IMG/VR virus record: IMGVR_UViG_3300035698_018317
Location: 1-64,000 of that record
Strand: one strand, 5' to 3'
Length of the DNA stretch: 64,000 bases
This document shows, one piece after another, positions 4,224-34,501 of the stretch; the first letter of the stretch is position 1, and every line of letters begins with the position of its first letter. Position numbers and translations under genes: made by a program. The notes under the pieces were generated by a model, which was given only the letters and a program-made list of their open reading frames with translations, searched no databases and was not told where the DNA came from.

Positions 4224-4463
4224 TTATAGTTCTGCCCGTGCTTGTCGTCTATCTTCTAAGTCATCCCAGAGTCCACATTGGGCTAATTCGTTATCTGACA
4301 TTTGAGCGGTTGCTCGTTCTATTTGGGCTTCTAGTCTAGCTACTTTATCTTGGTCATAGTCCATAGCGTTTTCGGCTCTGCTTAGAGTGTCCATCCAGCC
4401 CAGTACTCTTTCTATTCTTTGGGTGGCTTCTTTTAACTTGATATGTTCTAAGAATGATTTCAT
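4224..4463 (-). CDS. Small protein with capsid-targeting-like N-terminus
   Basis: Starts MKSFLEHIKLKEA; ATGA overlap with the upstream gene. Confidence 0.65.
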   Translation of the reverse strand: MKSFLEHIKLKEATQRIERVLGWMDTLSRAENAMDYDQDKVARLEAQIERATAQMSDNELAQCGLWDDLEDRRQARAEL

Positions 4464-4738
4464 TGTTTCCTGATGGATGGGAATTTAGGCATCGGCACAC
4501 CGGGAATCTGTCGTGTTGGTTCAGGTTCAGTATCAATGAGTTCATCGGCGAATTGTTCAACAGCTTGTCCGTATTGTTTATACAAGTTTTGTAATTGTTG
4601 TATTTTCCCTCTGTCATCCAGTTCGACATGTTCCCAGCTATCTTTTATACCTTGAAGTTGTCTTATTATTACATCGAGTAATTTATCTACGCCAAATTCA
4701 CGTTCTTCTTTAAGTTGCCATTCTTTATATGATTTCAT
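4460..4738 (-). CDS. Small protein with capsid-targeting-like N-terminus
   Basis: Starts MKSYKEWQLKEE. Confidence 0.7.
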   Translation of the reverse strand: MKSYKEWQLKEEREFGVDKLLDVIIRQLQGIKDSWEHVELDDRGKIQQLQNLYKQYGQAVEQFADELIDTEPEPTRQIPGVPMPKFPSIRKQ

Positions 4739-4743
4739 AATCG

Positions 4744-4959
4744 TTATTGTAAAACTCTCATCAGGTCGGTTAATTCTCCCACAGTTGCTAACTCTCCTTC
4801 TTCGCCATTAACATTTAAATGGTCTTGATATGCGAACGCTTTGTTAGCTTCATGTACATTAGAAATCATGTATAAAACTGCCATGCGTATCAGATATTTT
4901 TGTCGCTCACGAGTGTCTTCATTTAATTGTACGTTTTTATATTCTTTGAATGATTTCAT
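4744..4959 (-). CDS. Small protein with capsid-targeting-like N-terminus
   Basis: Starts MKSFKEYKNVQLNED; TATATA 5 nt upstream of the ATG. Confidence 0.7.
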   Translation of the reverse strand: MKSFKEYKNVQLNEDTRERQKYLIRMAVLYMISNVHEANKAFAYQDHLNVNGEEGELATVGELTDLMRVLQ

Positions 4960-4995
4960 AACTTTATATACTCATTCTAAAATTATTATTTTGGA

Positions 4996-5340
4996 TTAGC
5001 CATTTAATCTATAGACGAGTAGTGCATCTTCCATATTATAAGCTTCATATGAGTTCCATTTGATTGGATATTTATCAGGGTTATTTACGTAATTTATAAT
5101 TTGGAATTTTGAAACATATTTGTTTATTATGGCTTTAATGCCATCTTTAGAGATGGATGTTTTATGACATGCTCTTGTTTCAGGTGTAAAATCCCAACGT
5201 ATTTCAATATCTTTGTATTCGCTATAATCGGTCCATTTTGATGTTGACCGTTTGGAAAGTTTAAGTAATCTCTTAGAGAGGGGTGGGTTTAAGGTTATGG
5301 CTGGTTTTTCCCATCCTAATTTTAGTTTCCTTGTATTCAT
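4996..5340 (-). CDS. Hypothetical protein
   Basis: 114-aa ORF, no motif recognised. Confidence 0.55.
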   Translation of the reverse strand: MNTRKLKLGWEKPAITLNPPLSKRLLKLSKRSTSKWTDYSEYKDIEIRWDFTPETRACHKTSISKDGIKAIINKYVSKFQIINYVNNPDKYPIKWNSYEAYNMEDALLVYRLNG

Positions 5341-5406
5341 AACATATTATAAGGAATAATTAGGATTTTGCAAAGACTAATGGATTTATATTTAAAAGGG
5401 AGCACC

Positions 5407-5610
5407 ATGAAATTTGAAGAATTTGTTATTTCTAAAGAAGGCCAACTTAACGAAGGAGATACCTCACAGAGTTATTCCCTTGCAAACAGATTATATATTG
5501 CTTTAGAAGAGGAAGTAGCTCGTTGGGGACCAATGCAACGTTTTGGCCGTGAAATTAGGGCCAATGAAGAACTTTTACAAGCTCTTTCAGCTTGGCGTAA
5601 GATACACTAG
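5407..5610 (+). CDS. Small protein with capsid-targeting-like N-terminus
   Basis: AAAAGGGAGCACC-ATG; starts MKFEEFVISKEGQLNEG. Confidence 0.65.
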   Translation: MKFEEFVISKEGQLNEGDTSQSYSLANRLYIALEEEVARWGPMQRFGREIRANEELLQALSAWRKIH

Positions 5611-8307: not shown

Positions 8308-8333
8308 TTTATTACCTTTCAAAATATCCTAGT

Positions 8334-8973
8334 CAAACACCCCTACGCATGTAGGGAAAACCTCGGACGACGCTGTTTATGGCGGACCCTCCGTAGGGAC
8401 ACCCCTACGCATGTAGGGAAAACGACCTGCTTGAACGCTTGGAAATTTCTGGTACAGGGACACCCCTACGCATGTAGGGAAAACAAATAAAACAATCAGG
8501 AGACAAAGAGTTGGCTAAGGGACACCCCTACGCATGTAGGGAAAACGCTCTGTAAGCTGTCGTAAGGAAGACTCAGTGGGGACACCCCTACGCATGTAGG
8601 GAAAACTTAGAACTTTCTATGTTGCCGTTAGAACCCTCAATGGGGACACCCCTACGCATGTAGGGAACACGCTGCTGATTTGGCAACATTCAGAGCAGAT
8701 GAAGGGACACCCCTACGTTGTAGGGAAAAATTAAACAATCGTTTTTTCAACAGAAAACCCATTGGTACACCCCTACGCATATGTAGGGAAAACATAAAAA
8801 GAGGAGAAATAAAACGAGAACACTGGGTACACCCCTACGAATGTAGGGAACCTATCGTTGCGATACTCAGACGTGGTATTCCTTGGGGACACCCCTACGC
8901 ATGGTAGGGAAAATGGCCAAGTGGTTCACCGTGGCCAACCATGAACCGGGAACACCCTTACATGTAGGGATAC
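8334..8973 (-). CRISPR. CRISPR array 1: 11 repeats, 10 spacers, type I-E
   Basis: 28-nt repeat GTTTTCCCTACATGCGTAGGGGTGTCCC (minus sense). Plus-strand repeat starts at 8334, 8396, 8457, 8519, 8579, 8643, 8704, 8764, 8826, 8886 and 8948; spacers 32-36 nt. Confidence 0.97.
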
Positions 8974-8975
8974 AA

Positions 8976-9545
8976 TCATCGGCTTAACAGCAACATTCCA
9001 AATCCAAAAGATTTACCTTTGCCTATACCTTTTTTAATGGTTTGAGAGAAATCTTCTGTAGAAGTTATTTTTAACTTACCTTTGAAAACAACTTTGTTAT
9101 GTGTTTGTTTACCTATTTTGTCTTTGAATTGTATTGATGATGGTTGTCCTATATTAAGACCACATATAGTAAACCCATGCTGTTTACCTTTTCTCACAAT
9201 CCAACGCACTAAATCTTTTTCTTCAGTAATAGCTCTATATTTTTTATTTTGTTTAACAACAGGATTTGCTGTTAATACAAAATTAAATATTTTTCCGTCC
9301 TTTACACCGACATCAAATTGTTTAACATCTGCGTGGAACTTTTTATCTGACCAATTAGGTTTTGTTTCAGACTGTACCAAAACAGAGTCATCACAAACAA
9401 CATATAGGACATTATGGTTCTGTCTAGCCATTCCTTTTTCATCGGGGAATCCAGACATTACGGTTCTATGTATTTGATAATTTGATGCAATAAGTCTATA
9501 ACATTCTGGGGTTGGTTTAAATTTTAATTTTGATAAGAACATCAT
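8976..9545 (-). CDS. cas6e: Type I-E crRNA endonuclease Cas6e
   Basis: YQIHRTV, VLVQS, F.LTANP and C-terminal G-loop GIGKGKSFGFG. Confidence 0.93.
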   Translation of the reverse strand: MMFLSKLKFKPTPECYRLIASNYQIHRTVMSGFPDEKGMARQNHNVLYVVCDDSVLVQSETKPNWSDKKFHADVKQFDVGVKDGKIFNFVLTANPVVKQNKKYRAITEEKDLVRWIVRKGKQHGFTICGLNIGQPSSIQFKDKIGKQTHNKVVFKGKLKITSTEDFSQTIKKGIGKGKSFGFGMLLLSR

Positions 9546-10162
9546 TCTCCTTTACCAAAGTCAACATGAACAGATTGGATGTTTCTAGCCCCATATACTT
9601 TATCTGATATAGGAACATCCTCAACTCGTTCGCTGTCTATTGTTTTTTCATTAGTTTCTACAATAAATCTAACAACATTTTTTGCAGGTAGTTGTTTAAG
9701 AGCATCAAATGGGTTTTCATCATTTGTGACTTTAGAGATAATTGGTGTCGTAATAGGACATGCCAACCTTCCCATATAAAGATGATAACATGGATGGTTT
9801 AAGCCTTCAGTTATTTCATCCACGAGTATGTCATCGCCTGTCAATGCGACAGTGAATTGACTATCGGAAGAGAGGTAATATCTCCATGTTTGAACACTTT
9901 GTTTCCCTTTTCCAATCAATTTAACGAAATTACCAGCATTTTGGTAGTCGCATTCTTTTACACCTTGATTATCAACTCGCACCGCCATTCGAAGGCTAAG
10001 AAGTTCCTTAGCCTTCGAATGGTTAGAACGGATTCCCATAGCGGATTTAATTAAGCCTAGTATTCCGCTATAAGTTGGTTCATTGCGAGTTTCTCGATAA
10101 ACATGCTTGCTGCTATCGCCCCAACTCTGCATACCTTTAAGTGTTAATATAATGGTTTTCAT
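9542..10162 (-). CDS. cas5e: Type I-E Cas5
   Basis: MQSWG, EPTYSGILGLI and LYMGRLACP; start moved to 10162 (AAGGGA SD). Confidence 0.93.
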   Translation of the reverse strand: MKTIILTLKGMQSWGDSSKHVYRETRNEPTYSGILGLIKSAMGIRSNHSKAKELLSLRMAVRVDNQGVKECDYQNAGNFVKLIGKGKQSVQTWRYYLSSDSQFTVALTGDDILVDEITEGLNHPCYHLYMGRLACPITTPIISKVTNDENPFDALKQLPAKNVVRFIVETNEKTIDSERVEDVPISDKVYGARNIQSVHVDFGKGE

Positions 10163-10166
10163 TTTT

Positions 10167-11267
10167 TTATCCCTTAAGAGTATCCACAACTTTTTCGCAT
10201 ACTTCTTGTAAGGACATCTTGCCGTCAATATCCTTTAAGGAGCATACAAACGTGTGAGAAGGTTTATTTCCAAAAGTTTCTTCTACTGCTTGTCGATATT
10301 CGAAGAAGTTACGGATAGCCACATCAGTAAGGCTTTCTTTATCTTTATGATTGGGAACTACTGGAGTCTCAAAAGCGTTCACATCGCTATTTGGTTGAGT
10401 ATCCAAAATGTCCACAACCACAAGGGCAGGCACAACATTATTGGCAAATGTATTAGCTTTTCCTTTTGGTACGTCCATAGCGAATGCTGAAATGAATTCA
10501 GCACATGCCTCTGCTGTAAGATTGGCGTCATCAAGATTTTCCATAAGTTTATCAACGCAAATTGAAGCATATTGATAATAGCAGGAAGAATTAAACGACA
10601 ATGAGCCAAGGTGACCAGCCCCAGTGGTATCCTCTTCCCCAGAGTCAATCTTAAGGTCATCTATTGCTGTAAAATAATCAAATTCTTCAGCAAGGGCATT
10701 CACACCCATTGCATGGGCGACCTGTACAGCGGCATAAACTTCATGGGTTTTGACGGTAGCTTGCATTCTTCCGAACATGGCAACATCGACAGTGATGCCA
10801 ATAGGTTTCCCATGAAGTATTTTCTTGATATTCTTGATATCAAAATCGTCTTCCTTCATTGCCACAACAACTCTGTCAATAATGCTATCAATTTCTTTAT
10901 CAGACGTAAAAATCAAACAGGATGTAAGGTTTTCTTTTCCTTTTTTACTATTTCTCTTCTTGTCGAAAACTGTGTTAACGATAGCATTGGCAATATTAAC
11001 ACGAGTTTTTTCATCTTCTACAAAATCCAACTTGTTGATGATTCGTTTAAGAATCATCTGTGTTCGAATTCCGTGATAAGCATGAACTTTTTCAGCGTCC
11101 ATGTTCTCATGCCAGAATTCACGAACCATTCTCTTAAGACATTGGCTAGAAATTCTGGAGCGGCGGGAGCCACCAAATACACAATCTTTTTGTTCTCCAC
11201 TATCATCCGCATTAGGTCTAGACACGGGGTAGTTCTTCAATAATCCAATCTTTACAAATTTTGACAT
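10167..11267 (-). CDS. cas7e: Type I-E backbone subunit Cas7
   Basis: NADDSGEQKDCVFGG.RRSRISSQCLKR, DVAMFGRM, VQVAHA and DYFTAIDD. Confidence 0.95.
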   Translation of the reverse strand: MSKFVKIGLLKNYPVSRPNADDSGEQKDCVFGGSRRSRISSQCLKRMVREFWHENMDAEKVHAYHGIRTQMILKRIINKLDFVEDEKTRVNIANAIVNTVFDKKRNSKKGKENLTSCLIFTSDKEIDSIIDRVVVAMKEDDFDIKNIKKILHGKPIGITVDVAMFGRMQATVKTHEVYAAVQVAHAMGVNALAEEFDYFTAIDDLKIDSGEEDTTGAGHLGSLSFNSSCYYQYASICVDKLMENLDDANLTAEACAEFISAFAMDVPKGKANTFANNVVPALVVVDILDTQPNSDVNAFETPVVPNHKDKESLTDVAIRNFFEYRQAVEETFGNKPSHTFVCSLKDIDGKMSLQEVCEKVVDTLKG

Positions 11268-11284
11268 TTTTTTAATTCCTTCTG

Positions 11285-11815
11285 TTATGCCATTTCTGGC
11301 GAGTTAATTTTTTCTTTTTTTGATTCTACTTTTTTTACTGGTTGTTCCCAAAAATCTTTTGAGAATTTGTTTTGAACCCACATATCATCTTCTTTCCACC
11401 ATGTTAATCCTTGTAACAAATCAGCCCAATTAATCGGAATTCTTTTAGCTGCTGATAATCGTATCAGTGTTCCAAGATGTTGGAATACTGGGATTTCTTC
11501 TGTAGCATCTAGGAAAGAAAGAAATTTCCTATTCATTCCTTCTTCGCTATATTCCTTAATTAATGGTTTAATACTTTTACCAAATGATTTTGTGTCTGTA
11601 TGACGTGGGTTGATTGCGAATAAGCGTGCTGTATGAATGAAACAGAGATTACTCCAAGATTCATTTTGTGTTGGAAGGTATGGGTAAATATACCTACCAA
11701 TTTGAAACAGCTTAGTTGGGTTACTTTTCTTAAATTTTGACAATATAGCTGGGCCTCTTTTGCTTTTTGTCAATTTAACTAAATGGTCTATAAAATTGTC
11801 TATTCTTTTATTCAT
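11285..11815 (-). CDS. cse2: Type I-E small subunit Cas11 (Cse2)
   Basis: Lies between cas8e and cas7; helical, with INWADLL and KDFW motifs. Confidence 0.88.
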   Translation of the reverse strand: MNKRIDNFIDHLVKLTKSKRGPAILSKFKKSNPTKLFQIGRYIYPYLPTQNESWSNLCFIHTARLFAINPRHTDTKSFGKSIKPLIKEYSEEGMNRKFLSFLDATEEIPVFQHLGTLIRLSAAKRIPINWADLLQGLTWWKEDDMWVQNKFSKDFWEQPVKKVESKKEKINSPEMA

Positions 11816-13232: not shown

Positions 13233-13265
13233 GTTATTTCCTTTCTTAATTATCATCATGTCAAG

Positions 13266-13294
13266 AATATACAGTATGATAAAATAAAAAGCAA
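13266..13294 (-). promoter_or_regulatory. Sigma70-like promoter for the cascade operon
   Basis: Minus strand TTGCTT-17 nt-TATATT between array 2 and cas8e. Confidence 0.5.
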
Positions 13295-19939: not shown

Positions 19940-20365
19940 TTATTTAAGATATTTTTTGATAAGGTCACTGGAATTTTTTAGAAGAGCGGTTAAACCGAAG
20001 TGTTTTGGAGAAACTTGTTTTAATTCTGCGAGTGTTGCCCACTTAGCTTTATCTGTTTCGAAGTTTAGTTTTGGTTTGAATTCATTTACTAAGCCGATAA
20101 AGTTATGGAATTTAAGGTGTTTATCTTCATAAACATAGGCTGGGAAGAGTTCCATATCGCCTTTAAAGCCTGTTTCTTCCCTAAATTCACGTAGGGCTTC
20201 CTTTTTCATATCACTTGATTCAGCTTTCCCGCCGAAGGATGCCCATGTTCCCGGTTCAGGTCCGTCTTGCCCTCTGAGTCCAACAAGGATTTTTCCCTCC
20301 GGTGAAATAGCTAGTATTCCGGCCCCGGTGATACGATTTATATATTTTTTGAATTCAAGTAGCAC
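19940..20365 (-). CDS. Nudix hydrolase
   Basis: GTWASFGGKAE...ALREFREETG; GTG start. Confidence 0.88.
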   Translation of the reverse strand: MLLEFKKYINRITGAGILAISPEGKILVGLRGQDGPEPGTWASFGGKAESSDMKKEALREFREETGFKGDMELFPAYVYEDKHLKFHNFIGLVNEFKPKLNFETDKAKWATLAELKQVSPKHFGLTALLKNSSDLIKKYLK

Positions 20366-24770: not shown

Positions 24771-24778
24771 AGGTTATC

Positions 24779-25153: not shown

Positions 25154-26224
25154 TTAGCTGACCCAAATCACATGTTTTTTTGCTCTGGAAGCGGCTGTAT
25201 AGGCCCATCTCGTATGGTCCCAAAACTTACATTGCTGTTCAAGGACCATTACATTGTCCCATTCATCCCCTTGAGATTTATGTGCTGTGATGCAATATCC
25301 ATAATCGAAAGGCAACGGGTCATCCTGTGAACCTTGGAAATCACATTTTTCCTGATTAAACTGTTCTGGGTCAAAGAATACACGATACATTTCATCATTA
25401 GAAGTGAATTCTATTTGGTTTTTCAATTTTCCTGACATAGTTGTTATATGTCCTTGCATCCCATTGAATACCCCTAATTTTTTATGATTTTTCAAGCACA
25501 TGATTTTGTCACCAACTACAGGCCAGTCAGCATCGAATTCTTTTCTATATCTGACTTTTTTGTTCATAGCGACTCGTGTTTTGTTGAATGCACATATGAT
25601 TTGGTCTGCATCATCAATATAATTGTTTATCTCATAGTTTTTTATAAAAACTACTTTTCCTTCTATACTTCGGAAGGAGGTGGCCGGATAACCCATTCTG
25701 ATATGTTGAGCGAAGTGAGCAATTTCTCCAGCATTTCTATGTATTTTTTCTAATCGTAAATCCGGGTCCATCATTAACTTCATTCCTTCACCAACGGGTT
25801 CTAATTGCCCGTGGTCGCCCACAAAGATGATAGGCAGTCCAAAGGAGCATAAGTCTTGATAAATGGTCTTACTGACCATTGAGGCTTCATCTACGATGAT
25901 TCCATCGAAGGCCAAGAACTCGGCCAGCCTAAAGACAGGACTTCCATGTTTATCGAGAATCATTTTCCCGTCTTTATCTAAAACAGGTTTATATATTAAA
26001 CTATGAATTGTAGAAGCGGAATCTATCCCTTTTTGCCTTAAAACATTTGCTGCTTTTCCTGTGAATGCACATATGGCATAAGTAGGTAATACTTCATGAA
26101 GGTAAGAAACGACTGTCGATTTGCCCGACCCTGCCCAGCCTCCAATTGTGGTTATTTTGTTGTCAAATTTAAGAACTTCTTGTACAACATATTCTTGTTC
26201 ATTAGTTAATTTAATATTTTTCAT
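25154..26224 (-). CDS. RecD/Dda-like SF1B DNA helicase
   Basis: GWAGSGKS, DEASMV, GDHGQLEPV and YCITAHKSQGDEW. Confidence 0.9.
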   Translation of the reverse strand: MKNIKLTNEQEYVVQEVLKFDNKITTIGGWAGSGKSTVVSYLHEVLPTYAICAFTGKAANVLRQKGIDSASTIHSLIYKPVLDKDGKMILDKHGSPVFRLAEFLAFDGIIVDEASMVSKTIYQDLCSFGLPIIFVGDHGQLEPVGEGMKLMMDPDLRLEKIHRNAGEIAHFAQHIRMGYPATSFRSIEGKVVFIKNYEINNYIDDADQIICAFNKTRVAMNKKVRYRKEFDADWPVVGDKIMCLKNHKKLGVFNGMQGHITTMSGKLKNQIEFTSNDEMYRVFFDPEQFNQEKCDFQGSQDDPLPFDYGYCITAHKSQGDEWDNVMVLEQQCKFWDHTRWAYTAASRAKKHVIWVS

Positions 26225-26288
26225 ATTTTATTTCTTTTGTTGGTGGACTCGCAGGCACCGGACTATATAATTGTATAAGGATTATACC

Positions 26289-27164
26289 ATGAATGAATTT
26301 ACAAAACAATGCCCATCTTGCGGAAAATTAATTAATTGCAAAACAAAATATTACTTAAAAGAGTCAAAAAGAAAAAATAGGAATTGCCAATCATGTGCAG
26401 CAAAAGAAAGAATAAAAAAATACGGAAACAATGATAGTTTTAATAAAATATCAAAAAAAGGAGCACAATCCGGCGAGCTAAACCCATTTTATGGAAAAAA
26501 ACATTCTGACGACGCTAGAAAAAAAATAAGTGAAAATACCAACCGAGAATGGATGAATACAGCAGAATATAAAGCAAAGGTGTCTAAGCAATGTTCTGGT
26601 AAGGGCAATCCAATGTATGGAAAAATATGTTATCAAATTTGGTTGGAAAAATATGGCAAAGAAGAAGCAGATAGACGTAAAGAAGCAAGAAGACAGAAAG
26701 CTTCCAAAAGTCTTTCTGGAGCTAATAATCCGATGTACGGCAAACCATCACCACAGGGGTCAGGTAATGGTTGGAATGGATGGTATAAAGATTGGTTTTT
26801 CAGAAGTTTGTTAGAATTGTCCTATGTTGTAAATGTATTGGAAAAACAAAATAAAAAATGGGTAAGTGCTGAATATATTAAAATACCATATGAATCATAT
26901 GATGGACATCAAAGGACTTACCGACCAGATTTTTTAGTCGATAGTCATTTGCTTATAGAAATTAAGCCCGCTAAACTTGTTAATACACGTTTGGTGCAAA
27001 TTAAAAAACAAGCGGCTATCCAATATGCAAAACAAAAAGACATGGATTATCAAATTATATCACCACAAATGATATCTAAGTCTAATTTGATACAATTGCA
27101 TCAGGATGGACAATTTAAATTTACTGAAAAATATGAAGAGAAGTTCATTCAATATTATAGATAA
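26289..27164 (+). mobile_element. Free-standing putative homing endonuclease (Zn finger + NUMOD3 repeats + TnsA-like PD-(D/E)xK domain)
   Basis: CPSC..CQSC, NPFYGKKHS, NPMYGK twice, YRPDF..IEIKP. Confidence 0.75.
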
Positions 27165-27215
27165 TTGTTTAAAGTCTATATATAAAATTTTAATATAAAG
27201 ACCATATATAAATTC

Positions 27216-27785
27216 ATGAGCATAACTTGTCAATATACAGATAACAACGGGGAGTTACAGTCAGCCCAAATTTGTGCTGGCTTAACTGAAGAGGGAATGG
27301 TTCCGGCTATCACCTTATGTCAACAGCCAGAACTTCTTGTAACGATTCCTAGTTACGGAAATGAATGTGAAGTAGTGGCTTTAGAAACAGACCCTATTCC
27401 GCCTACACCTACTCCCACAGGAAACGTCCAAAAACAATTATGGTTTTCATCGGTTATTGACTTTACGTTTGCCGGTAATACAAACATATACCGAGTTCCA
27501 GATGGTTATTATTTAATGATTGACACATTAGAGATTGTCACGCTACAGATAACTACTCCGGGGACCGCCCCAACTGTAAAGTTTGGTACTAGCGCAAATG
27601 ATGATTTATTCTTTGGGCCAACCTTAAGTCAATCAAATGCCGAAAATGCTCGTCATGTGGCTGAAATACCTCAGAATTTAGTTACTGCAACTAATTACGT
27701 ATCAGGTGGGGTTCATTTGAAATCTACGGCAGCGGTTCATATTGGATTGTTTATTTTTACTGGATACTTAATCGAAACAGTTTAA
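27216..27785 (+). CDS. Hypothetical protein, possibly virion-associated
   Basis: 189 aa, Thr-rich and beta-like; TATATA 5 nt before the ATG. Confidence 0.65.
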   Translation: MSITCQYTDNNGELQSAQICAGLTEEGMVPAITLCQQPELLVTIPSYGNECEVVALETDPIPPTPTPTGNVQKQLWFSSVIDFTFAGNTNIYRVPDGYYLMIDTLEIVTLQITTPGTAPTVKFGTSANDDLFFGPTLSQSNAENARHVAEIPQNLVTATNYVSGGVHLKSTAAVHIGLFIFTGYLIETV

Positions 27786-27786
27786 A

Positions 27787-28092
27787 CTATTTTAAGAATT
27801 TTTTTTCGTAAGCTCTGTATATTTTGCTGTACTCTTTACCCCATATTGTACCATGAAATTCGTCTTCTTTTTCCCATGCTTTTGCATGACCCATTTCATG
27901 TAATAATGTATCTATTGCTGCCTCTTCAGATAGCATCTTATTAATTCTTATGAGATATTTGCCCTTTATCAGTTCACAATCCCCACAATAATCATCTGGC
28001 ATTTTTACTCGACGCACCCTAATGGGATGGTCAAATAAACAATGACTTCTTAGATATTTCGAAATTCTGTAATATCTGTCGTACTCACTCAT
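27787..28092 (-). CDS. Small HExxH metallopeptidase (SprT/ImmA-like)
   Basis: TLLHEMGHA...HG..W. Confidence 0.7.
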   Translation of the reverse strand: MSEYDRYYRISKYLRSHCLFDHPIRVRRVKMPDDYCGDCELIKGKYLIRINKMLSEEAAIDTLLHEMGHAKAWEKEDEFHGTIWGKEYSKIYRAYEKKFLK

Positions 28093-28205
28093 TAAAAATA
28101 TTTATTCATCATAAAAAATATATCTTATCTATATTAAGATAGGTTCAGACCTTGATGGCTGACCAACGACCGGATGCATAGTGCAACGGTAAGAAAGGAA
28201 AAAAG

Positions 28206-28718
28206 ATGTTAAGAGTACGAGAATTATCAAAAAGAGACGATTTTTTATGGCCCATTCAGTTCCAATTCAATAAGTTGTTTGATGAGTTTTTTTCAAATAA
28301 GAAATTAGATGCCTCAAAACATTCTGTTGGATATCCCAAAATGGACATTTTTGAAACAAAAAATAAATGGGTTATTCAGGTAGCTATTCCGGGTGTTGAC
28401 CCTGACCTTATAGGAGTAGAAATTACTCCTGAGAATACTGTTCGAATATATGGGGAAATGACTGAAAAACGACTTCCTTCTAACCTTGAACTCGGTGGTA
28501 AATTCGAGAAATCACCTGCCCGAGGGGAACATTATGAAGCCATATATTACATGAAAGAACTTAGAAGGTCTAAGTTTGAACGTGAAATATATTTACCTGA
28601 AAATCTAGCGGGAGAGCCAGAAGCTATTGTGAAAGATGGAATGCTCACATTATCATGGGATTTTGAAGTAACAGAAGAAGAACCAGAACCCAAGTTGGTC
28701 GAAATTAAACGAGGGTAA
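28206..28718 (+). CDS. Small heat-shock protein (Hsp20 family)
   Basis: PKMDIFET...VAIPGVD, FEREIYLP and DGMLTL; C-terminal VEI motif. Confidence 0.88.
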   Translation: MLRVRELSKRDDFLWPIQFQFNKLFDEFFSNKKLDASKHSVGYPKMDIFETKNKWVIQVAIPGVDPDLIGVEITPENTVRIYGEMTEKRLPSNLELGGKFEKSPARGEHYEAIYYMKELRRSKFEREIYLPENLAGEPEAIVKDGMLTLSWDFEVTEEEPEPKLVEIKRG

Positions 28719-28726
28719 TATCAACT

Positions 28727-28756
28727 AAAAGACCCCGCTTCGGCGGGGTCTTTTTT
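28727..28756. terminator. Bidirectional intrinsic terminator
   Basis: AAAAGACCCCGC-TTCG-GCGGGGTCTTTTTT between convergent genes. Confidence 0.9.
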
Positions 28757-28762
28757 ATTTAT

Positions 28763-29524
28763 TTAACGTTTGTTACGCCAAACGGAGTCTAGGGTAACAG
28801 GCATATGTACGATATTTGCTTCTGCACCGGGATAAGGCGGATAAACTTGATGGATGATAAATTGTTTTGTTTTTCCGGCTTTGAGTAATTCTCGTGCCAC
28901 ATTTTTAAACGCCTCAATGTGGTCTTTTCTATCATCCCATATTTCAATGATATCAAATCCTTTGTAATTTGCTACAAGTGTATTGACAACATATGTTTTA
29001 TGAGCAAGCGTATTGGAATCAGGTTTTTCTGTGCCTTTTTTCGATGTTCTTGTAGGATAACCTTTTTCGGTCATAAAGTCTCCCGTATAGTACTCTTGAT
29101 GAGAATTGGGAGACTTTTCTTCTGGGTGAACCATATCTTCTTTTGAGTCAACGGCTGATTGGAATTTTTCCCGAGATTTTTCATTGGCAGAACCAATGAC
29201 TCTTCGGCCATACAATTCTTGTTGTCTTAGGACGTTTCTAACGTGGGCAGAAGCAACGCCTCTTCTCCCGGTAAGAAGAATAGCTACAGTATTAGGGTCG
29301 TTCTTTGCTTCTTTAAAAGCATCAACCACTTCTTGATTTACGCTTCCATCATAGAATGGTGCCGTAAGGGAGTCTTTACTTCCCCACCAATCTTTACCGC
29401 TCCATCCGTGTTGAGGGTCATCTGTTTTTGGTCTTTCTGGTACATTAGCAATTGTACCATCAAAGTCGAAAACAGATAGACGACGAGTAGGAGCTTCTTC
29501 CACATATTGTCGAAATTCGCCCAT
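28763..29524 (-). CDS. HAD phosphatase, Swiss-Army-Knife RNA-repair-like family
   Basis: VFDFDGT, DPNTVAILLTGR and IEIWDDRKDH. Confidence 0.75.
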   Translation of the reverse strand: MGEFRQYVEEAPTRRLSVFDFDGTIANVPERPKTDDPQHGWSGKDWWGSKDSLTAPFYDGSVNQEVVDAFKEAKNDPNTVAILLTGRRGVASAHVRNVLRQQELYGRRVIGSANEKSREKFQSAVDSKEDMVHPEEKSPNSHQEYYTGDFMTEKGYPTRTSKKGTEKPDSNTLAHKTYVVNTLVANYKGFDIIEIWDDRKDHIEAFKNVARELLKAGKTKQFIIHQVYPPYPGAEANIVHMPVTLDSVWRNKR

Positions 29525-29539
29525 TCTTTCATTCCTAGC

Positions 29540-31096
29540 TTACTTTAACGTTTTTTTGAATGCTTCAGCTTCTAAGCCACTGATGATTTCACCACGTTGA
29601 TGCGGTGGTACTTTACCAGAACCATTGCACTCTTCGCAACCCATTCCGTTACATTTTTTACAGGTATCTCCACCTGATGCTTCTATATCACCCCATTTTA
29701 CTGAGGGTTGATGACCTGCGAAGGCTTTAACTCGTTTTGCCCACCAGCCACCTCTACGGTTTCTTTTGGTGCCGGGAGCGTTGAACATTTCTACCCAATC
29801 TCTAATTTGTTGGGCTGATAAACCAGTTCCTTGTTTTCCTTTAAAGAACTGACTAACTTGGTTGGGTTGGAAATTCTTTAATTTAAGCAGAAACAGGACG
29901 GCTCGACGTTCTTCTATTTGCCAACCAGTCGCTTTTGATTCTTTCCCAACTTGTCGCAGGGAGCTTAATGTTTCAGCTACTTTTTCAATAGGATTATACC
30001 TAAGAAGCCAAGCAAGAGCCAGAGGTTTATCATTTTTATCAGAAAATTCTGCTGGAACTCCTTTAGCTTGAGCAAAATTGACTCCGGGGAATATAACCGG
30101 AAGTAATTTTGTCCTATCATAAATAGTAAGATATTTCTTTGAATCTATGTCTGGGTCTAATAGACCTTTCAAAAATTCATCTCTGATTCTTTCAAGAGAG
30201 ATACGTTCTGGGAGATTCATGAAATTTGGAATTGCCTTGGCAATTTCCGGGTCAAGTTTATCTCCTTGTCCAAATCGGCATTGGAATCGGATTGCTCTCA
30301 TAATACGAACAGGGTCTTCCTCAAATCTTTCTTGAGCTTTTCCAACTGTTTTTACCTTACCATGTTTCAAGTCATGAAGACCTCTTCCAGTTGGGTCATA
30401 TAACTTTTTATTTTCTCCATCTGCTTTAGTCAATTCAATATAAAGAGCATTAATTGTCAAATCTCTTCTACTGGCATCTTCCTTCGGATTATCCACAAAA
30501 TCAACTTCTGATTGGCCATTTTCTGTACCTTGGCCGACCTTTGCATCTTTACGGAAGGTTGCGATTTCAAATTCTTCTTTTTCTACCACAGCGCTAATAA
30601 CAAAGACTTTTTTCTCTTCACTATTATCTCTTCCTTTTATGAACCAAAGTTTTGTATCACCCTTTTGGGCATCTTCTATTTTTCTTGTTTGTCCATCTTC
30701 ATCATAGAATTTTGAAGGAAGGTTTAGTTCATCTCCTTCTTTTCCGCTTTTATCACCAGTTCTTTTGAATCCGGCTGATGCGAGGATGGTTGCCACTTGA
30801 GCGGGAGTAGCATTGGTGGCTAAATCATAATCTTTAACAGTTTTACCTTTGATGAAGTCACGCACGGGACCACCTACCAAGTAAAGTGTTTTCTTGGGCA
30901 TGGCTACGTCTTTACCGCTGGTATCTTTTTGAAGTACGATGCTTCCGCTATTCAGAAACGCTCTAACTATTGGGCGTAATTTTTGTGGAGGTATAAATCC
31001 TTTGTCAAGAGGGGCCGCAGCAGATTCGGCTTTCCAATCTTTGCTACCTTTTTCCTCTTTCAACATCACGTATTTTTTAAAGCTTCTTGTATTCAT
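29540..31096 (-). CDS. Class II tRNA nucleotidyltransferase (CCA-adding/poly(A) polymerase family)
   Basis: LVGGPVRD..KDYDLAT, EIATFR, RRDLTINA, EDPVRIMRAIRF and SLERIRDE; C-terminal CxxC..CxxC. Confidence 0.9.
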   Translation of the reverse strand: MNTRSFKKYVMLKEEKGSKDWKAESAAAPLDKGFIPPQKLRPIVRAFLNSGSIVLQKDTSGKDVAMPKKTLYLVGGPVRDFIKGKTVKDYDLATNATPAQVATILASAGFKRTGDKSGKEGDELNLPSKFYDEDGQTRKIEDAQKGDTKLWFIKGRDNSEEKKVFVISAVVEKEEFEIATFRKDAKVGQGTENGQSEVDFVDNPKEDASRRDLTINALYIELTKADGENKKLYDPTGRGLHDLKHGKVKTVGKAQERFEEDPVRIMRAIRFQCRFGQGDKLDPEIAKAIPNFMNLPERISLERIRDEFLKGLLDPDIDSKKYLTIYDRTKLLPVIFPGVNFAQAKGVPAEFSDKNDKPLALAWLLRYNPIEKVAETLSSLRQVGKESKATGWQIEERRAVLFLLKLKNFQPNQVSQFFKGKQGTGLSAQQIRDWVEMFNAPGTKRNRRGGWWAKRVKAFAGHQPSVKWGDIEASGGDTCKKCNGMGCEECNGSGKVPPHQRGEIISGLEAEAFKKTLK

Positions 31097-31097: not shown

Positions 31098-31655
31098 TTA
31101 TTGTTGACCTTTTAACATGGCAGTCATTCTTTCAGGATGCGTTTTCGATATTCTCACTACATAGACTTCTTTACCGTCTTGTGTCGTCCATGATTGTAGT
31201 ACCTTTCCTAATTCTGACAAGTTCCCATTTTGAATTTCTTTTTGGACTCTATCATCTGAGATAGCAGCCTTTACCGCTTGTGTTTTTCTCTTTTTAGCAT
31301 ATTCTGTCGGAGAAAGTAGTCCTTTATCTCCTGAAGGGTCCATTTGAATCTCTATTTCTAAATCATTTGCGCCCATTTCATATTTATTTACATCCATGCC
31401 TGTGAAGCCCATAAATGGTTCTGCACCAGAATCTTTCATGGTATCTAGCATTCTATTTCTGAAAGCACTACCGATTCCTGTTGTGGCTTGAGTAGTCCAT
31501 TTTCCTAAAGTAGAATGTCCTTTTTGAGATAAATAATCTCCGACTCCTCTTGGCATATCCATTGCGGGTTGTGAATACCTCATTTGCCGAACTTGTCTGG
31601 TTCCCGGCAAATTACCTTGTAACTCTTGAAGTTGTAACCACTCTTTAAATTTCAT
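31098..31655 (-). CDS. Hypothetical protein with capsid-targeting-like N-terminus
   Basis: Starts MKFKEWLQLQE. Confidence 0.7.
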   Translation of the reverse strand: MKFKEWLQLQELQGNLPGTRQVRQMRYSQPAMDMPRGVGDYLSQKGHSTLGKWTTQATTGIGSAFRNRMLDTMKDSGAEPFMGFTGMDVNKYEMGANDLEIEIQMDPSGDKGLLSPTEYAKKRKTQAVKAAISDDRVQKEIQNGNLSELGKVLQSWTTQDGKEVYVVRISKTHPERMTAMLKGQQ

Positions 31656-31663: not shown

Positions 31664-32158
31664 CTATAACGGAGCTTGTAGTCCTAATCTAAATAGGAGA
31701 TACGCAGCCAAAAGTACCCAAACAATTTGTATTACAAATCCAAATGCTGATTTCCATCTTCCTTCATTTTGTTGTGATTGGCCTTGAAGTTCTTGAATAT
31801 TAGCAGCGTTTTGGTGACTTCTTTCATCTGATGCTTGAATAATAGGGATATTAGTATCACATTTATTCTGAAGCGATTCTAAATGAAGGTTCGTATCATG
31901 TACTCTGTCAAATAGTTTTCCTATGTCTCTTTTATATGAGTCAGGACTGGTTGCTTCTACCACAGAAAGTCTCGCAGACATTTTACTAATAGAGTCACTC
32001 ATGTTTTCTATTTTTTTATCTGTTTCATCTTGCTTTTTCATGACAACTTGAACTCGTTCGTCAATCCTAGTGGAAAGTTCGAATAAGTTCTTTATTGACT
32101 CGGAAACTTGCAAAAAATATTGTTCGCCGACTGTCGTGTTGTTCACTGAATCTCCCAT
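31664..32158 (-). CDS. Coiled-coil protein with C-terminal TM segment
   Basis: Heptad-like body followed by AFGFVIQIVWVLLAAYLLF. Confidence 0.65.
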   Translation of the reverse strand: MGDSVNNTTVGEQYFLQVSESIKNLFELSTRIDERVQVVMKKQDETDKKIENMSDSISKMSARLSVVEATSPDSYKRDIGKLFDRVHDTNLHLESLQNKCDTNIPIIQASDERSHQNAANIQELQGQSQQNEGRWKSAFGFVIQIVWVLLAAYLLFRLGLQAPL

Positions 32159-32208
32159 TAACGTACCTTAAATAAATGAAACGTTGTATTCTCTACTATA
32201 TATACATC

Positions 32209-32673
32209 ATGGAAGCCAAAGAAAAAGAAAAGCTTGAGATAGAAGAATTACCTGAGAATATGAAAGACATGATTCCATCTATAAACGTGGGTGAAATTCA
32301 AAAAAAAGAAGAAGAAGAACCATTAATAACTGATGATGTCCTCCTAACTATGTATGCGGAGATTGCGAATAACATTCGAGGAGACCGTGGTGAAATAGAC
32401 AATATTTTAAATAATTTCGTAGATATGGTGTTTAATGAAGGAGACTCAACTACTTCAAGTAAAGAAGCAGTAGTCAACCTTATCAAGTTGAGGTCTGAAC
32501 AATCTGATAAGATGACAAAAGTTGCAGATTTAATGACAAGAATAAAATTAAAAGAAAGAGATACTTTTCCACGTTATATGGCAGCTTCTCAAAATAATAC
32601 CATAAATATAGGTGGAGATAGAAGAGCGTTGTTAGAAGCGATTACAAAAGCAAAAAGTGCCCAAAAGGATTAA
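32209..32673 (+). CDS. Hypothetical protein, possibly T4 gp16-like small terminase
   Basis: Helical core and a C-terminal QNNTINIGG motif reminiscent of T4-type small terminases; weak similarity. Confidence 0.35.
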   Translation: MEAKEKEKLEIEELPENMKDMIPSINVGEIQKKEEEEPLITDDVLLTMYAEIANNIRGDRGEIDNILNNFVDMVFNEGDSTTSSKEAVVNLIKLRSEQSDKMTKVADLMTRIKLKERDTFPRYMAASQNNTINIGGDRRALLEAITKAKSAQKD

Positions 32674-32674
32674 T

Positions 32675-33973
32675 ATGAGTAATAGACATAATTTGGATGA
32701 TTGGTTGGTAGAGGCTGACACACCCGCTGCGTCGGGACAACCAGACCCGATGGGTATGACCCCATCTAGTGACCCTGCGGATATATCGCAGGACATGAGT
32801 GACCCTAATGTTGCAAATATGCAGCAGCAAAATGCTCCTTCGGAAGACCCAAACAATCCAGAGGATGTGAATCAAGACCCAATAGCACCGGATATGCCAG
32901 AACCACAAAACGAAGTAACAGATTTCGAAGTGTGGAAAAATGAATATCTGAAAGAGTCCATCATAGGAAATGCAAATGAACTGATGGACTTGTTGAACCA
33001 AGTACGTGACAAAGAAAATCTTAAACCTTATCAAAGAAAATTTGTTGAAGACAATGTAAATATCCAATTGGTCCGATTGAATTCTAATGTGGATAAAGCA
33101 TCTAAAGAAATACGAAGACAAATAAAACAACAGTTAGATAAAAACAATCCGGCTACGTCAGTAGTCAACCATGTAACATCAGTATTAGAGACAATGCCTG
33201 AATTGAACAGCATTTTCATCAAGTTATGTGGATACACAGGTCAAAAAGGTGATTTGCATAGAAAGTTTATCGCTGGTTTACTGGGTGGAGTTCAAGTTGG
33301 AAGTGGTGGAAATAATGAAGATATTATTTACAATGAAAAAGAATATTCAATATTGTTTTCCACTCGTTTCAATTCCAGATGGGGTGATGTCATGTTAGGC
33401 TCTTGGAGTTTAAGAAGTGATGACGCCGAAAGATATTTGGAAGAACCTGAATTAAAAAGATTACAAGAAGGAAGCCCAGAAGAAAAAGATGCGTTAAGAA
33501 GAAGAATCGTTATTGATTCAATAGCTCAACTTTTTGAAACAAGAGCTTTTTATATCAACGTAGTAGCAGATGATGGAACTCTCTTCACTCTTGGGTGGGA
33601 TATAGCTAACTCTTTGAGAAATGCGTTTGTAGAAGGAAAATTAGTTGTAAAAACAAGACAATCTGGTGACTCAGAAGCAATGATAGATGACCAAGGTAAA
33701 ATTATTCCTTTAATGGACATCAGTATTGCTTACGTAAAAGAGACGGGTCAACAGGATGAAGAAGGAAAGCCGGAAACTGAGGAAGTTGAATTTATAGACA
33801 GAAAAGACGGAATGCTTTTCTTAACTGCTGATTTGAAACTTATTCGAGAGGCATCCGTTGCTCTACAAGGTACATCATTTAAAGAAACACCTTATACGGG
33901 AAACCCCTCAGATTTAATGACGTTAAAACGATGTGTCTATTCTGCTCATGATTTGCTGATGAGGCAATGCTAA
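32675..33973 (+). CDS. Hypothetical protein, probably virion-associated
   Basis: Acidic, Pro/Gln-rich N-terminus starting MSNRHNLDDWLVEA; head of the structural region. Confidence 0.7.
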   Translation: MSNRHNLDDWLVEADTPAASGQPDPMGMTPSSDPADISQDMSDPNVANMQQQNAPSEDPNNPEDVNQDPIAPDMPEPQNEVTDFEVWKNEYLKESIIGNANELMDLLNQVRDKENLKPYQRKFVEDNVNIQLVRLNSNVDKASKEIRRQIKQQLDKNNPATSVVNHVTSVLETMPELNSIFIKLCGYTGQKGDLHRKFIAGLLGGVQVGSGGNNEDIIYNEKEYSILFSTRFNSRWGDVMLGSWSLRSDDAERYLEEPELKRLQEGSPEEKDALRRRIVIDSIAQLFETRAFYINVVADDGTLFTLGWDIANSLRNAFVEGKLVVKTRQSGDSEAMIDDQGKIIPLMDISIAYVKETGQQDEEGKPETEEVEFIDRKDGMLFLTADLKLIREASVALQGTSFKETPYTGNPSDLMTLKRCVYSAHDLLMRQC

Positions 33974-33982
33974 AGGAAAATA

Positions 33983-34501
33983 ATGCAAAAATTTACAGAC
34001 TTTGTTGGCAAAAAAGAACGAGATGCTAGAAAACAACTCGGAATTATAAAGAAAATTCTTGAAAAGAATGATTATCAGGTCTCTGATTTTCTTGAAGAAA
34101 TAGGAGACCCTTACATATTCGTTAAGGCACCAAATACAAATGAAGAATTGTCATTTGAAGGCATTAGAATATACAAAATAGGAAGTGATATAGCATACAG
34201 AGTTCAAAACGAAGAAAAAACTCAGCCTTATGGAAAAGCTTATTCTATTGCTGTAGAAGAAATGTATGACGACTTTATTTCTGATAAGTTTAAAGAAGAA
34301 AAAGCTGGTCAAGAAGTAATGGAATCCGTATTTAAGGAAATAGAAAGATTTTTTACACAAAGTTTGATTGCTGAAAAGCAACTTCGTTCCGCAGAAATAG
34401 AAAAAAATAGGGACCAACTGGGCAGAGTCATCATAGGTGGAAGTGGCACAGGAACCGATTATAGCAACCTGATATCTAAAACAAGTGTTGGTAGCAACTA
34501 G
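33983..34501 (+). CDS. Hypothetical protein
   Basis: AAAGGAA SD; starts MQKFTDFV. Confidence 0.7.
   Translation: MQKFTDFVGKKERDARKQLGIIKKILEKNDYQVSDFLEEIGDPYIFVKAPNTNEELSFEGIRIYKIGSDIAYRVQNEEKTQPYGKAYSIAVEEMYDDFISDKFKEEKAGQEVMESVFKEIERFFTQSLIAEKQLRSAEIEKNRDQLGRVIIGGSGTGTDYSNLISKTSVGSN

What the first reader, a model, noticed from the sequence alone, without database searches (positions are those of the whole stretch)
4224..34501. Dispersed family of unrelated proteins sharing a T4-like capsid-targeting N-terminus
Seen: MKSFLEHIKLKE (4463), MKSYKEWQLKE (4738), MKSFKEYKNVQLNE (4959), MKFEEFVISKEGQLNE (5407), MGEFRQYVEE (29524), MNTRSFKKYVMLKE (31096), MKFKEWLQLQE (31655) and MSNRHNLDDWLVE (32675), with weaker MQKFTDF (33983) and MLLEFKKY (20365). 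Known: T4 internal proteins carry a CTS such as MKTYQEFIAE and are cleaved by the gp21 prohead protease after (I/L)-x-E. Inference: these proteins are packaged in the head and injected with the DNA.
Basis: partly seen in the sequence, partly recalled or inferred. Interest (0 to 1): 0.75.

Follow-up and report, generated by a model that had tools for sequence, protein, structure and literature searches.

The report
T4-like capsid-targeting tags, massively expanded
About one in ten genes of this huge uncultivated T4-related phage starts with the same roughly 10-residue tag, which closely matches the T4 signal that loads proteins into the phage head, so the phage probably injects dozens of ready-made proteins, including RNA-repair enzymes, with its DNA.

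Summary
All ten peptides are at the stated coordinates. The window is the first 64 kb of a 225-kb fragment of a huge phage.

- **Scale:** 32-36 of 309 genes start with M-[KR]-[TS]-F-x-x-[WYF]-[LIV]-E, against 0.6-1.7 expected by chance.
- **Nature of the tag:** it is selected at protein level, strictly N-terminal, about 10 residues long, and fused to unrelated proteins. These include a HAD RNA-repair phosphatase, a CCA-adding enzyme, cREC-REC and an ADP-ribosyltransferase.
- **Detachable:** orthologues keep the tag while the protein body diverges, and some homologues lack it.
- **T4-type head genes:** gp20 portal, Peptidase_S77 (gp21) protease with the conserved His/Ser, and gp23 capsid protein.
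- **Match to T4:** the informative positions (residues 4, 7, 8, about 10) are the ones mutagenesis showed to matter in the T4 IPIII capsid-targeting sequence. A model trained only on this clade ranks T4 IPI, IPIII and IPII 2nd, 3rd and 6th of 268 T4 N-termini.

Packaging, cleavage and injection remain inferred. Only about 45% of tags carry a canonical [LI]-x-E site.

This is a known mechanism at a scale I did not find reported, so I rate it a new variant.

The parts
28763..29524 (-). HAD_SAK_1 (RNA-repair type HAD phosphatase), 253 aa, with tag MGEFRQYVEE directly before the DFDGT motif
   Evidence: Pfam HAD_SAK_1 E=3e-16. Tag score 15.8. Most homologues shown (about three quarters of 43) carry the tag before DFDGT, and 5 lack it entirely. 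In the AF2 model (pLDDT 92.6), residues 1-10 have pLDDT 55 and no secondary structure, and the fold starts at residue 15.
29540..31096 (-). tRNA nucleotidyltransferase (CCA-adding / PolyA_pol family), 518 aa, with tag MNTRSFKKYVMLKE
   Evidence: Pfam PolyA_pol E=9e-27 and PHROG tRNA nucleotidyltransferase E=1e-45. Tag score 10.7. The orthologue in LR756511 is 36% identical and starts MRTTFLEFMGLKE.
31098..31655 (-). 185-aa protein of unknown function with tag MKFKEWLQLQE
   Evidence: Tag score 14.2. In the 5 homologues (76-85% identical) the tag is nearly invariant and is followed by an indel-prone linker. The AF2 model is poor (pLDDT 53) and was not used.
5407..5610 (+). 67-aa protein with tag MKFEEFVISKEGQLNE
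   Evidence: Score 9.4 from the 5407 start. AGGGAG lies 5 nt upstream of this ATG. No family hit.
4460..4738 (-). 92-aa protein MKSYKEWQLKE, a probable tag (near threshold)
   Evidence: Score 8.3, with 0.7 such scores expected among 309 genes. It is one of three adjacent small genes that all start MKS[FY]xE.
19940..20365 (-). NUDIX hydrolase, 141 aa, GTG start, N-terminus MLLEFKKY, a possible tag with no following Glu
   Evidence: Pfam NUDIX E=7e-10 from residue 13. Score 8.9. The LR756511 homologue lacks the ~10-residue extension. A different NUDIX protein in LR756511 carries a strict tag.
4744..4959 (-). 71-aa protein MKSFKEYKNVQLNE, a weak tag
   Evidence: Score 5.6, with about 5 such scores expected by chance among 309 genes. 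Membership is suggested mainly by its neighbours.
4224..4463 (-). 79-aa protein MKSFLEHIKLKE, a weak tag
   Evidence: Score 3.5, not distinguishable from chance alone. It has His where the family has Trp/Tyr/Phe.
33983..34501 (+). 172-aa protein MQKFTDFVGKKE at the head of the tail/baseplate operon, a weak tag
   Evidence: Score 5.0. The LR756511 orthologue (45% identical) starts MLEFKEFIDKKE, which looks more like the tag.
32675..33973 (+). 432-aa protein MSNRHNLDDWLVE, not classed as a tag
   Evidence: Score 6.3 with Leu in place of the anchor Phe. The orthologue keeps NLEDWL. No family hit.

Best explanation
The shared N-terminus is a capsid-targeting sequence of the T4 internal-protein type.

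Inferred mechanism:
1. A short N-terminal peptide, consensus M-[KR]-[TS]-F-[KR]-[QEK]-[WYF]-[LIV]-E-[EQ], presents Phe-4, an aromatic at 7 and an aliphatic at 8.
2. While the prohead assembles, this peptide docks the attached protein onto the scaffolding core inside the gp23-type shell.
3. The gp21-type serine protease then probably cuts after the Glu at position 9-11 and frees the cargo inside the head.
4. The cargo leaves with the DNA at infection and acts before any phage gene is expressed.

This clade of ~0.5-Mb phages tags about 10% of its genes this way, where T4 tags 3-4. The tagged set includes RNA-repair enzymes, an Alt-like ADP-ribosyltransferase and many small orphan proteins.

Shown: the tag, its enrichment, its modularity, its conservation, the T4-type head genes and its match to the T4 CTS. 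Inferred: binding to the scaffold, cleavage, encapsidation and ejection.
For: - **Enrichment.** 28-36 of 309 N-termini against 0.6-1.7 expected.
- **Clade-wide.** 31 strict-pattern hits (7.8 expected) and 35-42 PSSM hits of 1076 genes (1.9-3.8 expected) in the 595-kb relative LR756511.1, and 57 of 1068 against 2.5 expected in 80 related IMG/VR loci.
- **Protein-level selection.** Upstream DNA is not shared and synonymous codons vary.
- **Short and strictly N-terminal.** Phe sits at residue 3-5 in 85% of 128 non-redundant instances, and information falls to zero 8 residues after it.
- **Fused to unrelated bodies.** No paralogy. Pfam finds HAD_SAK_1, PolyA_pol, cREC_REC, ART-PolyVal, tRNA_lig_CPD, Peptidase_C39, NUDIX and HTH/sigma r4.
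- **Detachable.** HAD homologues occur with and without it. The NUDIX homologue lacks it. One orthologue has a 70-residue insertion between the tag and the shared domain. AF2 leaves the tag outside the HAD fold.
- **Kept in orthologues.** The tag persists where the bodies are only 24-45% identical.
- **T4 head module.** S77 protease with the conserved catalytic His/Ser, Gp23 capsid protein, and gp20 portal.
- **Same functional positions as T4.** They match the T4 IPIII CTS positions (PMC9026906).
- **T4 cross-check.** T4 IPI, IPIII and IPII rank 2, 3 and 6 of 268 under the clade model. The chance of that is about 6e-6.
- **Near-identical relatives' tags.** Tags such as MKTFAEYLAE followed by Ala almost match T4 MKTYQEFIAE followed by Ala.
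- **Hypervariable genes.** About 11 of 36 tagged genes have a homologue in the relative, compared with 115 of 309 overall, as with T4 internal proteins (PMC3012670).
Against: - There is no proteomic or other physical evidence.
- Only 15 of 33 tags contain a canonical [LI]-x-E within residues 4-25. The others have aromatic-aliphatic-Glu, a site not known for gp21.
- The scaffold candidate shows no detectable similarity to T4 gp22.
- No gp55 or gp33 homologue was found, so late expression cannot be argued by homology.
- Promoter evidence is thin. A TATAT[AT][AT] box gives p=0.047. CTAAATA lies upstream of only 5 tagged genes.
- Tagged proteins are not basic, as T4 IPs are.
- One hit is a DnaG-type primase, an unlikely cargo.
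- T4's best-scoring N-terminus is gp61.1, which to my knowledge is not a known virion protein.
- Packaging 30-80 different proteins would be unusual for a T4-type head.
Confidence: 0.7

Rival explanations
1. The tag is a real protein-level address, but for something other than the capsid. It could be a docking peptide for a phage chaperone, protease or AAA ATPase, a degradation or stabilisation signal, or a signal for another intracellular assembly.
For: The statistics show only that a short N-terminal peptide is under selection. Half of the tags lack the canonical gp21 site. Some bearers, such as the primase and the CCA enzyme, are not classical virion proteins. The phage encodes an AAA ATPase next to the terminase and an Hsp20.
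Against: It would have to be a coincidence that the tag matches the T4 CTS in position, length and functional residues, that it picks the T4 internal proteins out of the T4 proteome, and that the phage has the T4 head-maturation genes. A tagged 100-aa gene sits inside the head module throughout the clade.
Confidence: 0.17
2. The similarity is a by-product of translation initiation or composition. AT-rich codons after the start, or a signal on leaderless mRNAs, would produce similar peptides without any protein function.
For: The genome is 36% GC. Many genes have a TATAT[AT]A box only 8-14 nt before the ATG, which suggests very short leaders. The MK start is common in phages generally (my own knowledge).
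Against: - Shuffling each N-terminus keeps composition but gives 1.1 hits against 28 observed.
- The most conserved positions are Phe and Trp/Tyr/Phe. Synonymous codons vary (TTT/TTC, TTA/CTA/CTT, GAA/GAG), and the substitutions are conservative at the amino-acid level.
- Tagged genes have mixed 5' contexts, some Shine-Dalgarno and some TATA-proximal.
- Other AT-rich phages do not show the pattern. LR756508 has 0 of 693 and HSE3 has 1 of 142.
Confidence: 0.03
3. The proteins are diverged paralogues of one family, and the N-terminus is simply the best-conserved part of a common fold.
For: The three small genes at 4224-4959 are adjacent, similar in size and all start MKS[FY]xE.
Against: - No pairwise similarity remains beyond the tag.
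- Information content is zero after 8 residues.
- The bodies belong to unrelated Pfam families.
- Homologues exist without the tag.
- The tag lies outside the predicted HAD fold.
Confidence: 0.02

Closest known systems
[quoted passage not shown]
   Same: - An N-terminal tag of about 10 residues, with an aromatic at 4 and 7, an aliphatic at 8 and Glu near 10.
- Otherwise unrelated, fast-evolving cargo.
- The phage has a gp21-type protease and a gp23-type shell.
- The clade model ranks the T4 IPs at the top of the T4 proteome.
   Different: - At least 33 tagged genes in 225 kb (about 10% of genes), against 3-4 in T4 (about 1%).
- Phe/Trp are preferred over Tyr/Phe.
- Glu often follows the aliphatic residue directly, so the (L/I)-x-E site is present in only about 45%.
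- Cargo includes sizeable enzymes and is not biased to basic proteins.
- Nothing has been tested experimentally.
T4 Alt (ADP-ribosyltransferase packaged in the head, processed by gp21 and injected)
   Same: A tagged 117-aa protein at G000 198943-199296 matches Pfam ART-PolyVal above its cut-off. That makes it an ADP-ribosyltransferase predicted to be delivered with the DNA.
   Different: Alt uses a different propeptide (MELITELFDE) and is 682 aa. No homology to Alt was detected.
Ejection / inner-body proteins of phiKZ-like giant phages such as SPN3US (PMC5694885, PMC7411985, PMC10052503)
   Same: These are large heads that carry dozens of different internal proteins with propeptides, removed after Glu by a gp21-related protease.
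   Different: Those phages have no single short N-terminal tag described, a different cleavage logo, a different capsid lineage, and direct proteomic proof. Here the signal is a simple linear tag and the proof is missing.
Phage P1 Dar antirestriction proteins loaded into the head (PMC9024508, PMC12810830)
   Same: Defence-countering proteins are incorporated into the capsid during assembly and delivered with the DNA.
   Different: Incorporation in P1 is hierarchical and depends on DarA/Hdf rather than a shared 10-residue tag. The head genes are unrelated.

Membership tests
T4-type capsid-targeting sequence (CTS) proteins | The signal lies in the first ~10-19 residues of the primary translation product | tested here: met
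   The anchor Phe is at residue 3-5 in 85% of 128 instances. In 25 of 32 genes the start is the first start codon after an in-frame stop.
T4-type capsid-targeting sequence (CTS) proteins | Targeting determinants at residues 4 and 7 (Tyr4 and Phe7 in IPIII) | tested here: met
   The two most informative columns are Phe (4.5 bits) and Trp/Tyr/Phe three residues later (3.9 bits). The T4 data are from PMC9026906.
T4-type capsid-targeting sequence (CTS) proteins | Processing determinants: an aliphatic at 8 and Glu at 10, i.e. an (L/I)-x-E site for gp21 | tested here: inconclusive
   Leu/Ile/Val is at +4 and Glu at +5 to +7 in all strict instances. A canonical [LI]-x-E is present in only 15 of 33, and actual cleavage is untestable here.
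T4-type capsid-targeting sequence (CTS) proteins | The phage encodes a gp21-type (Peptidase_S77) prohead protease with catalytic His and Ser | tested here: met
   PF03420 scores E=2e-25 and 89.8 bits against a cut-off of 27. T4 His85/Ser140 align with His91/Ser144.
T4-type capsid-targeting sequence (CTS) proteins | A gp23-type shell assembled on a gp22-type scaffolding core that the CTS binds | tested here: inconclusive
   The Gp23 capsid protein scores E=4e-86 and the gp20 portal E=4e-33. A 308-aa acidic helical protein sits between the protease and the capsid protein but shows no similarity to gp22. Binding was not testable.
T4-type capsid-targeting sequence (CTS) proteins | The cargo regions are unrelated to each other and poorly conserved between related phages | tested here: met
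   No paralogy was found. About 11 of 36 tagged genes have a homologue in the nearest complete relative.
T4-type capsid-targeting sequence (CTS) proteins | The sequence resembles experimentally validated CTSs | tested here: met
   T4 IPI, IPIII and IPII rank 2, 3 and 6 of 268 T4 N-termini under a model trained only on the huge-phage clade.
T4-type capsid-targeting sequence (CTS) proteins | The protein is present in the virion, loses the tag there and is ejected into the host | not testable with these tools
   There is no isolate and no proteome. This needs virion mass spectrometry or reporter packaging.
T4-type capsid-targeting sequence (CTS) proteins | The protein is expressed while proheads assemble (late promoter) | tested here: inconclusive
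   CTAAATA, the late-promoter form of T4-like phage Aeh1 (PMC1524935), lies 12-15 nt upstream of 8 genes, of which 5 are tagged (p=5e-4). A TATAT[AT][AT] box precedes 12 of 40 tagged genes and 44 of 269 others (p=0.047). No gp55 or gp33 homologue was found.
Single paralogous protein family | Similarity extends over a common domain | tested here: not met
   blastp finds no pairs after trimming the tag. The Pfam domains are unrelated.
Mobile DNA cassette (promoter plus start region, as in T4 PeSL elements) | Nucleotide-level conservation across and upstream of the start | tested here: not met
   The upstream 60 nt are not alignable and synonymous codons vary.

The most novel reading that the evidence does not exclude
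A widespread environmental clade of ~0.5-Mb T4-superfamily phages has turned the T4 capsid-targeting sequence into a general cargo code. The code is carried by roughly one gene in ten.

On this reading each virion delivers a pre-made toolkit together with the DNA:
- tRNA/RNA-repair enzymes (a HAD-SAK phosphatase, a CCA-adding enzyme, cREC-REC and a cyclic phosphodiesterase);
- an ADP-ribosyltransferase;
- a papain-like protease;
- sigma/HTH proteins;
- dozens of small orphan proteins.

If so, the tag allows the injected proteome of uncultivated phages to be read from sequence alone.
Probability: 0.5. Interest if true: 0.8.

Novelty: new variant of a known kind. Interest (0 to 1): 0.62.

Why it matters
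- **Finding first-strike proteins.** Proteins injected with the DNA are a phage's first strike against host defences, and they are hard to find without virion proteomics. If this tag works like the T4 CTS, a 10-residue pattern would list the injected proteins of hundreds of uncultivated huge phages. 381 related contigs are already in IMG/VR. That list is a rich candidate source for new counter-defence proteins.
- **An unreported strategy.** Pre-packaged RNA-repair enzymes could mend tRNA damage from the first moment of infection. I did not find this strategy reported in the papers I searched.
- **What extra genes may be for.** Part of the extra coding capacity of huge phages may be head cargo.
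- **A practical use.** The set of natural tag variants could widen the T4 CTS protein-packaging technology.

Tried and rejected
- **DNA-level cassette or promoter-plus-start module.** Rejected. Upstream regions do not align and synonymous codons vary.
- **Paralogous family.** Rejected.
- **Composition or initiation artefact.** Rejected by the within-N-terminus shuffle and by outgroup phages.
- **Promoter class as a proxy for late expression.** This gave only weak signals. No gp55 or gp33 homologue was found.
- **Scaffold homology to T4 gp22.** None was detected.
- **Portal assignment.** I first took the 629-aa protein at G000 85600-87489 for the portal. blastp shows the gp20 homologue is at 81805-84306.
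- **Charge bias of cargo.** None was found.
- **AF2 of the 185-aa protein at 31098-31655.** The model had pLDDT 53, which is too poor for a fold search, so none was run.
- **First PSSM.** It used harsh pseudocounts and under-scored the T4 IPs. It was replaced by a clade-level model.
- **LR756508.1, a more distant huge phage.** It lacks the aromatic tag (0 against 2.3 expected). It has an F-K-x-L-L-x-E start in about 10 proteins of ~265 aa, which are probably paralogues, so I did not count it as support.
- **Annotations of tagged genes in cyanophage S-SSM4 and Xoo-sp13.** They gave no virion evidence.
- **Literature searches.** They found no report of a CTS expansion in huge phages. The library is incomplete.

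Full report
**What the window is.** The window is the first 64 kb of a 225,284-bp IMG/VR virus record that CheckV rates 44% complete, so the full genome is probably about 0.5 Mb. The standard genetic code fits. My own ORF-based gene caller gives 309 genes at 91% coding density.

**Checking the observation.** Nine of the ten peptides were found at the stated coordinates and strands. The tenth, MLLEFKKY at 20365, is read from a GTG start.
- Listing every N-terminus of the record showed at once that the pattern is not confined to 4224-34501. Dozens of genes across all 225 kb start with M-[KR]-[TS]-F-x-x-[WYF]-[LIV]-E.
- A strict pattern hits 28 of 309 N-termini. Internal density and internal methionines predict about 1.6. 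Shuffling residues 2-20 of each protein gives 1.1 +/- 1.06.
- An iterated PSSM finds 36, with 0.74 expected.
- A PSSM trained only on relatives finds 32, with 0.56 expected. Adding the 5407 start makes 33, or 10.7% of genes.
- In 25 of 32 cases the start is the first possible start codon after an in-frame stop, so the motif really is the N-terminus.

**What kind of signal it is.**
- The 60 nt upstream do not align and synonymous codons vary, so selection acts on the peptide and not on DNA or RNA.
- After the first ~15 residues are removed, no two bearers are similar.
- In 128 non-redundant instances, information is concentrated on Phe (4.5 bits, at residue 3-5 in 85%), an aromatic three residues later (3.9 bits), Leu/Ile/Val next, and Glu one to three residues after that. 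It vanishes 8 residues past the Phe.
- Bodies are unrelated. They include HAD_SAK_1, a CCA-adding nucleotidyltransferase, cREC_REC and ART-PolyVal. In the relative they also include tRNA-ligase CPD, Peptidase_C39, NUDIX and HTH/sigma region 4. Most have no family.

**The tag is an add-on.**
- Among 43 database homologues of the HAD protein, most carry the tag before the DFDGT motif, with a linker of variable length. Five start directly at the first strand.
- The AF2 model of the HAD protein is confident (pLDDT 92.6), except that residues 1-10 have pLDDT 55 and no secondary structure.
- The NUDIX homologue in the relative lacks the extension.
- One orthologue has 70 extra residues between the tag and the shared domain.
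- The 185-aa protein at 31098-31655 keeps the tag nearly invariant in five homologues, while the linker behind it has indels.

**Relatives.**
- The nearest complete genome is LR756511.1, a 595-kb uncultured phage with 78% capsid-protein identity. It shares only 115 of 309 genes, at a median identity of 40%.
- LR756511.1 also shows 31 strict-pattern hits against 7.8 expected, and 35-42 tagged N-termini by PSSM against 1.9-3.8 expected.
- Tagged genes that have orthologues keep the tag although their bodies are 24-45% identical.
- IMG/VR holds 381 contigs with a related capsid protein. In 0.98 Mb around the capsid gene of the best 80, 57 of 1068 genes carry the tag against 2.5 expected.
- Some of those tags, such as MKTFAEYLAE followed by Ala, are almost the T4 sequence.
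- A tagged 100-aa gene next to the head genes is conserved through the clade.

**Link to T4.**
- The record has a T4-type head module. It comprises large terminase, a gp20 portal at 81805-84306, a Peptidase_S77 protease at 87508-88230, an acidic helical scaffold candidate, and a Gp23 capsid protein at 89183-90622. There are also gp18, gp19, gp4, gp13 and gp25 homologues.
- The protease keeps T4 His85 and Ser140.
- T4 IPII and IPIII start MKTYQEFIAE and IPI starts MKTFKEFTST. The first sequence is confirmed in the literature.
- According to PMC9026906, targeting by the IPIII CTS depends mainly on residues 4 and 7, and processing on residues 8 and 10. These are exactly the informative positions here.
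- The clade-trained model, applied to all 268 T4 N-termini, ranks IPI 2nd, IPIII 3rd and IPII 6th. The chance of that is about 6e-6.
- Other phages with S77 proteases have only a handful of such N-termini. T4 has 3-4, cyanophage S-SSM4 has 2 and Xoo-sp13 has 4-5.
- What is new here is the roughly ten-fold expansion, not the principle.

**Limits.**
- Only 15 of 33 tags have a canonical [LI]-x-E within residues 4-25, against 23% of other proteins (p=0.01). The rest have aromatic-aliphatic-Glu, so cleavage by this protease is an open question. In T4, targeting does not require processing.
- The scaffold candidate is not detectably related to gp22.
- No gp55 or gp33 homologue was found.
- Promoter evidence is weak. 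CTAAATA, the late-promoter form described for T4-like phage Aeh1 (PMC1524935), lies 12-15 nt upstream of only 8 genes. Five of them are tagged (p=5e-4). A TATAT[AT][AT] box precedes 12 of 40 tagged genes against 44 of 269 others (p=0.047).
- Tagged proteins are shorter than the rest (median 117 against 173 aa) but not more basic.
- A primase scores just above threshold and is probably a false positive.

**Verdict on the ten claims**.
- Strong: 29524, 31655, 31096, 5407.
- Near threshold and plausible: 20365, 4738.
- Weak: 4959, 4463, 33983, 32675. For 33983, the orthologue's clearer start MLEFKEFIDKKE argues for membership.

**Conclusion.** The capsid-targeting interpretation is the best-supported explanation, and I put it at about 0.7. 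Encapsidation, cleavage and injection are still inferences that need virion proteomics or reporter packaging. I found no report of such an expansion in the papers I could search.

Noticed in passing
window 8322-16449: The phage carries a complete type I-E CRISPR-Cas interference module on the minus strand: Cas6e, Cas5, Cas7, Cse2, Cse1 and Cas3, all above Pfam cut-offs. There is also an array of about 9-10 repeats with ~61-nt spacing at 8322-8913. No cas1 or cas2 is seen next to it.
   Followed up: partly
window 18538-31096: This is a cluster of RNA-repair-type genes: RNA 2'-phosphotransferase Tpt1/KptA (19203-19721), NUDIX, a HAD_SAK_1 phosphatase and a CCA-adding enzyme. Three carry the tag or a near-threshold version, and Tpt1 does not. 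Elsewhere in the record a cREC_REC protein is tagged, and in the relative a tRNA-ligase CPD domain is tagged.
   Followed up: partly
window 22225-25078: A tandem run of about ten small genes (75-111 aa) lies on the minus strand. Most have a signal peptide plus a lipobox-like Cys, followed by a shared V-G-x-K-V motif. This looks like a lipoprotein family expansion.
   Followed up: no
window 1-4200: The first ~4.2 kb has GC 0.48 against about 0.36 elsewhere, strong AT skew and low coding scores. It could be a foreign island, a terminal region or an assembly join.
   Followed up: no
whole record, e.g. window 32197-32208, 49477-49492, 55396-55404: A TATAT[AT]A box sits only 8-14 nt upstream of the ATG of 34 genes, where about 4 are expected. 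These include the first gene of the tail/baseplate operon. It suggests a promoter that gives leaderless or near-leaderless mRNAs.
   Followed up: partly
L003:7670-8059, L004:230-562, L006:10329-11141, L007:10350-11336: A second shared N-terminus, M-G-[AS]-T-T-x-E-G-x-G-x-G-S-A, occurs on four proteins of 110-328 aa. They are similar in pairs, and only over the first ~60 residues. Two of them lie directly behind a TATATA box.
   Followed up: partly
L009:18066-18257: This 63-aa protein consists of a tag ending ...KLQE followed by a stretch 46% identical to capsid-protein residues 46-72 (E=7e-7 pairwise). It may mark the capsid protein's own maturation site (...LMNE then VSTDTSD), or it may be a tagged mimic of the capsid N-arm.
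   Followed up: partly
L024:18966-19130 (T4 gene 61.1): The best CTS-like N-terminus in T4 under the clade model is the 54-aa hypothetical protein gp61.1 (MKTFKEFIKED, score 14.4). It scores above the known internal proteins.
   Followed up: no
window 26289-27164 and 28206-28718: A NUMOD3 plus TnsA-like endonuclease, a probable homing endonuclease, and an Hsp20 small heat-shock protein lie just upstream of the tagged enzyme genes.
   Followed up: no
LR756508.1 (loci L065-L089): This more distant 484-kb phage lacks the aromatic tag. About ten proteins of ~265 aa start M-x-[RK]-F-K-x-L-L-x-E. This may be a lineage-specific tag variant or just a paralogous family.
   Followed up: partly
LR756511.1 242621-242989 (L016) and several loci: The 595-kb relative has a second, diverged S77 protease copy and several short fragments or paralogues of the capsid protein.
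   Followed up: no
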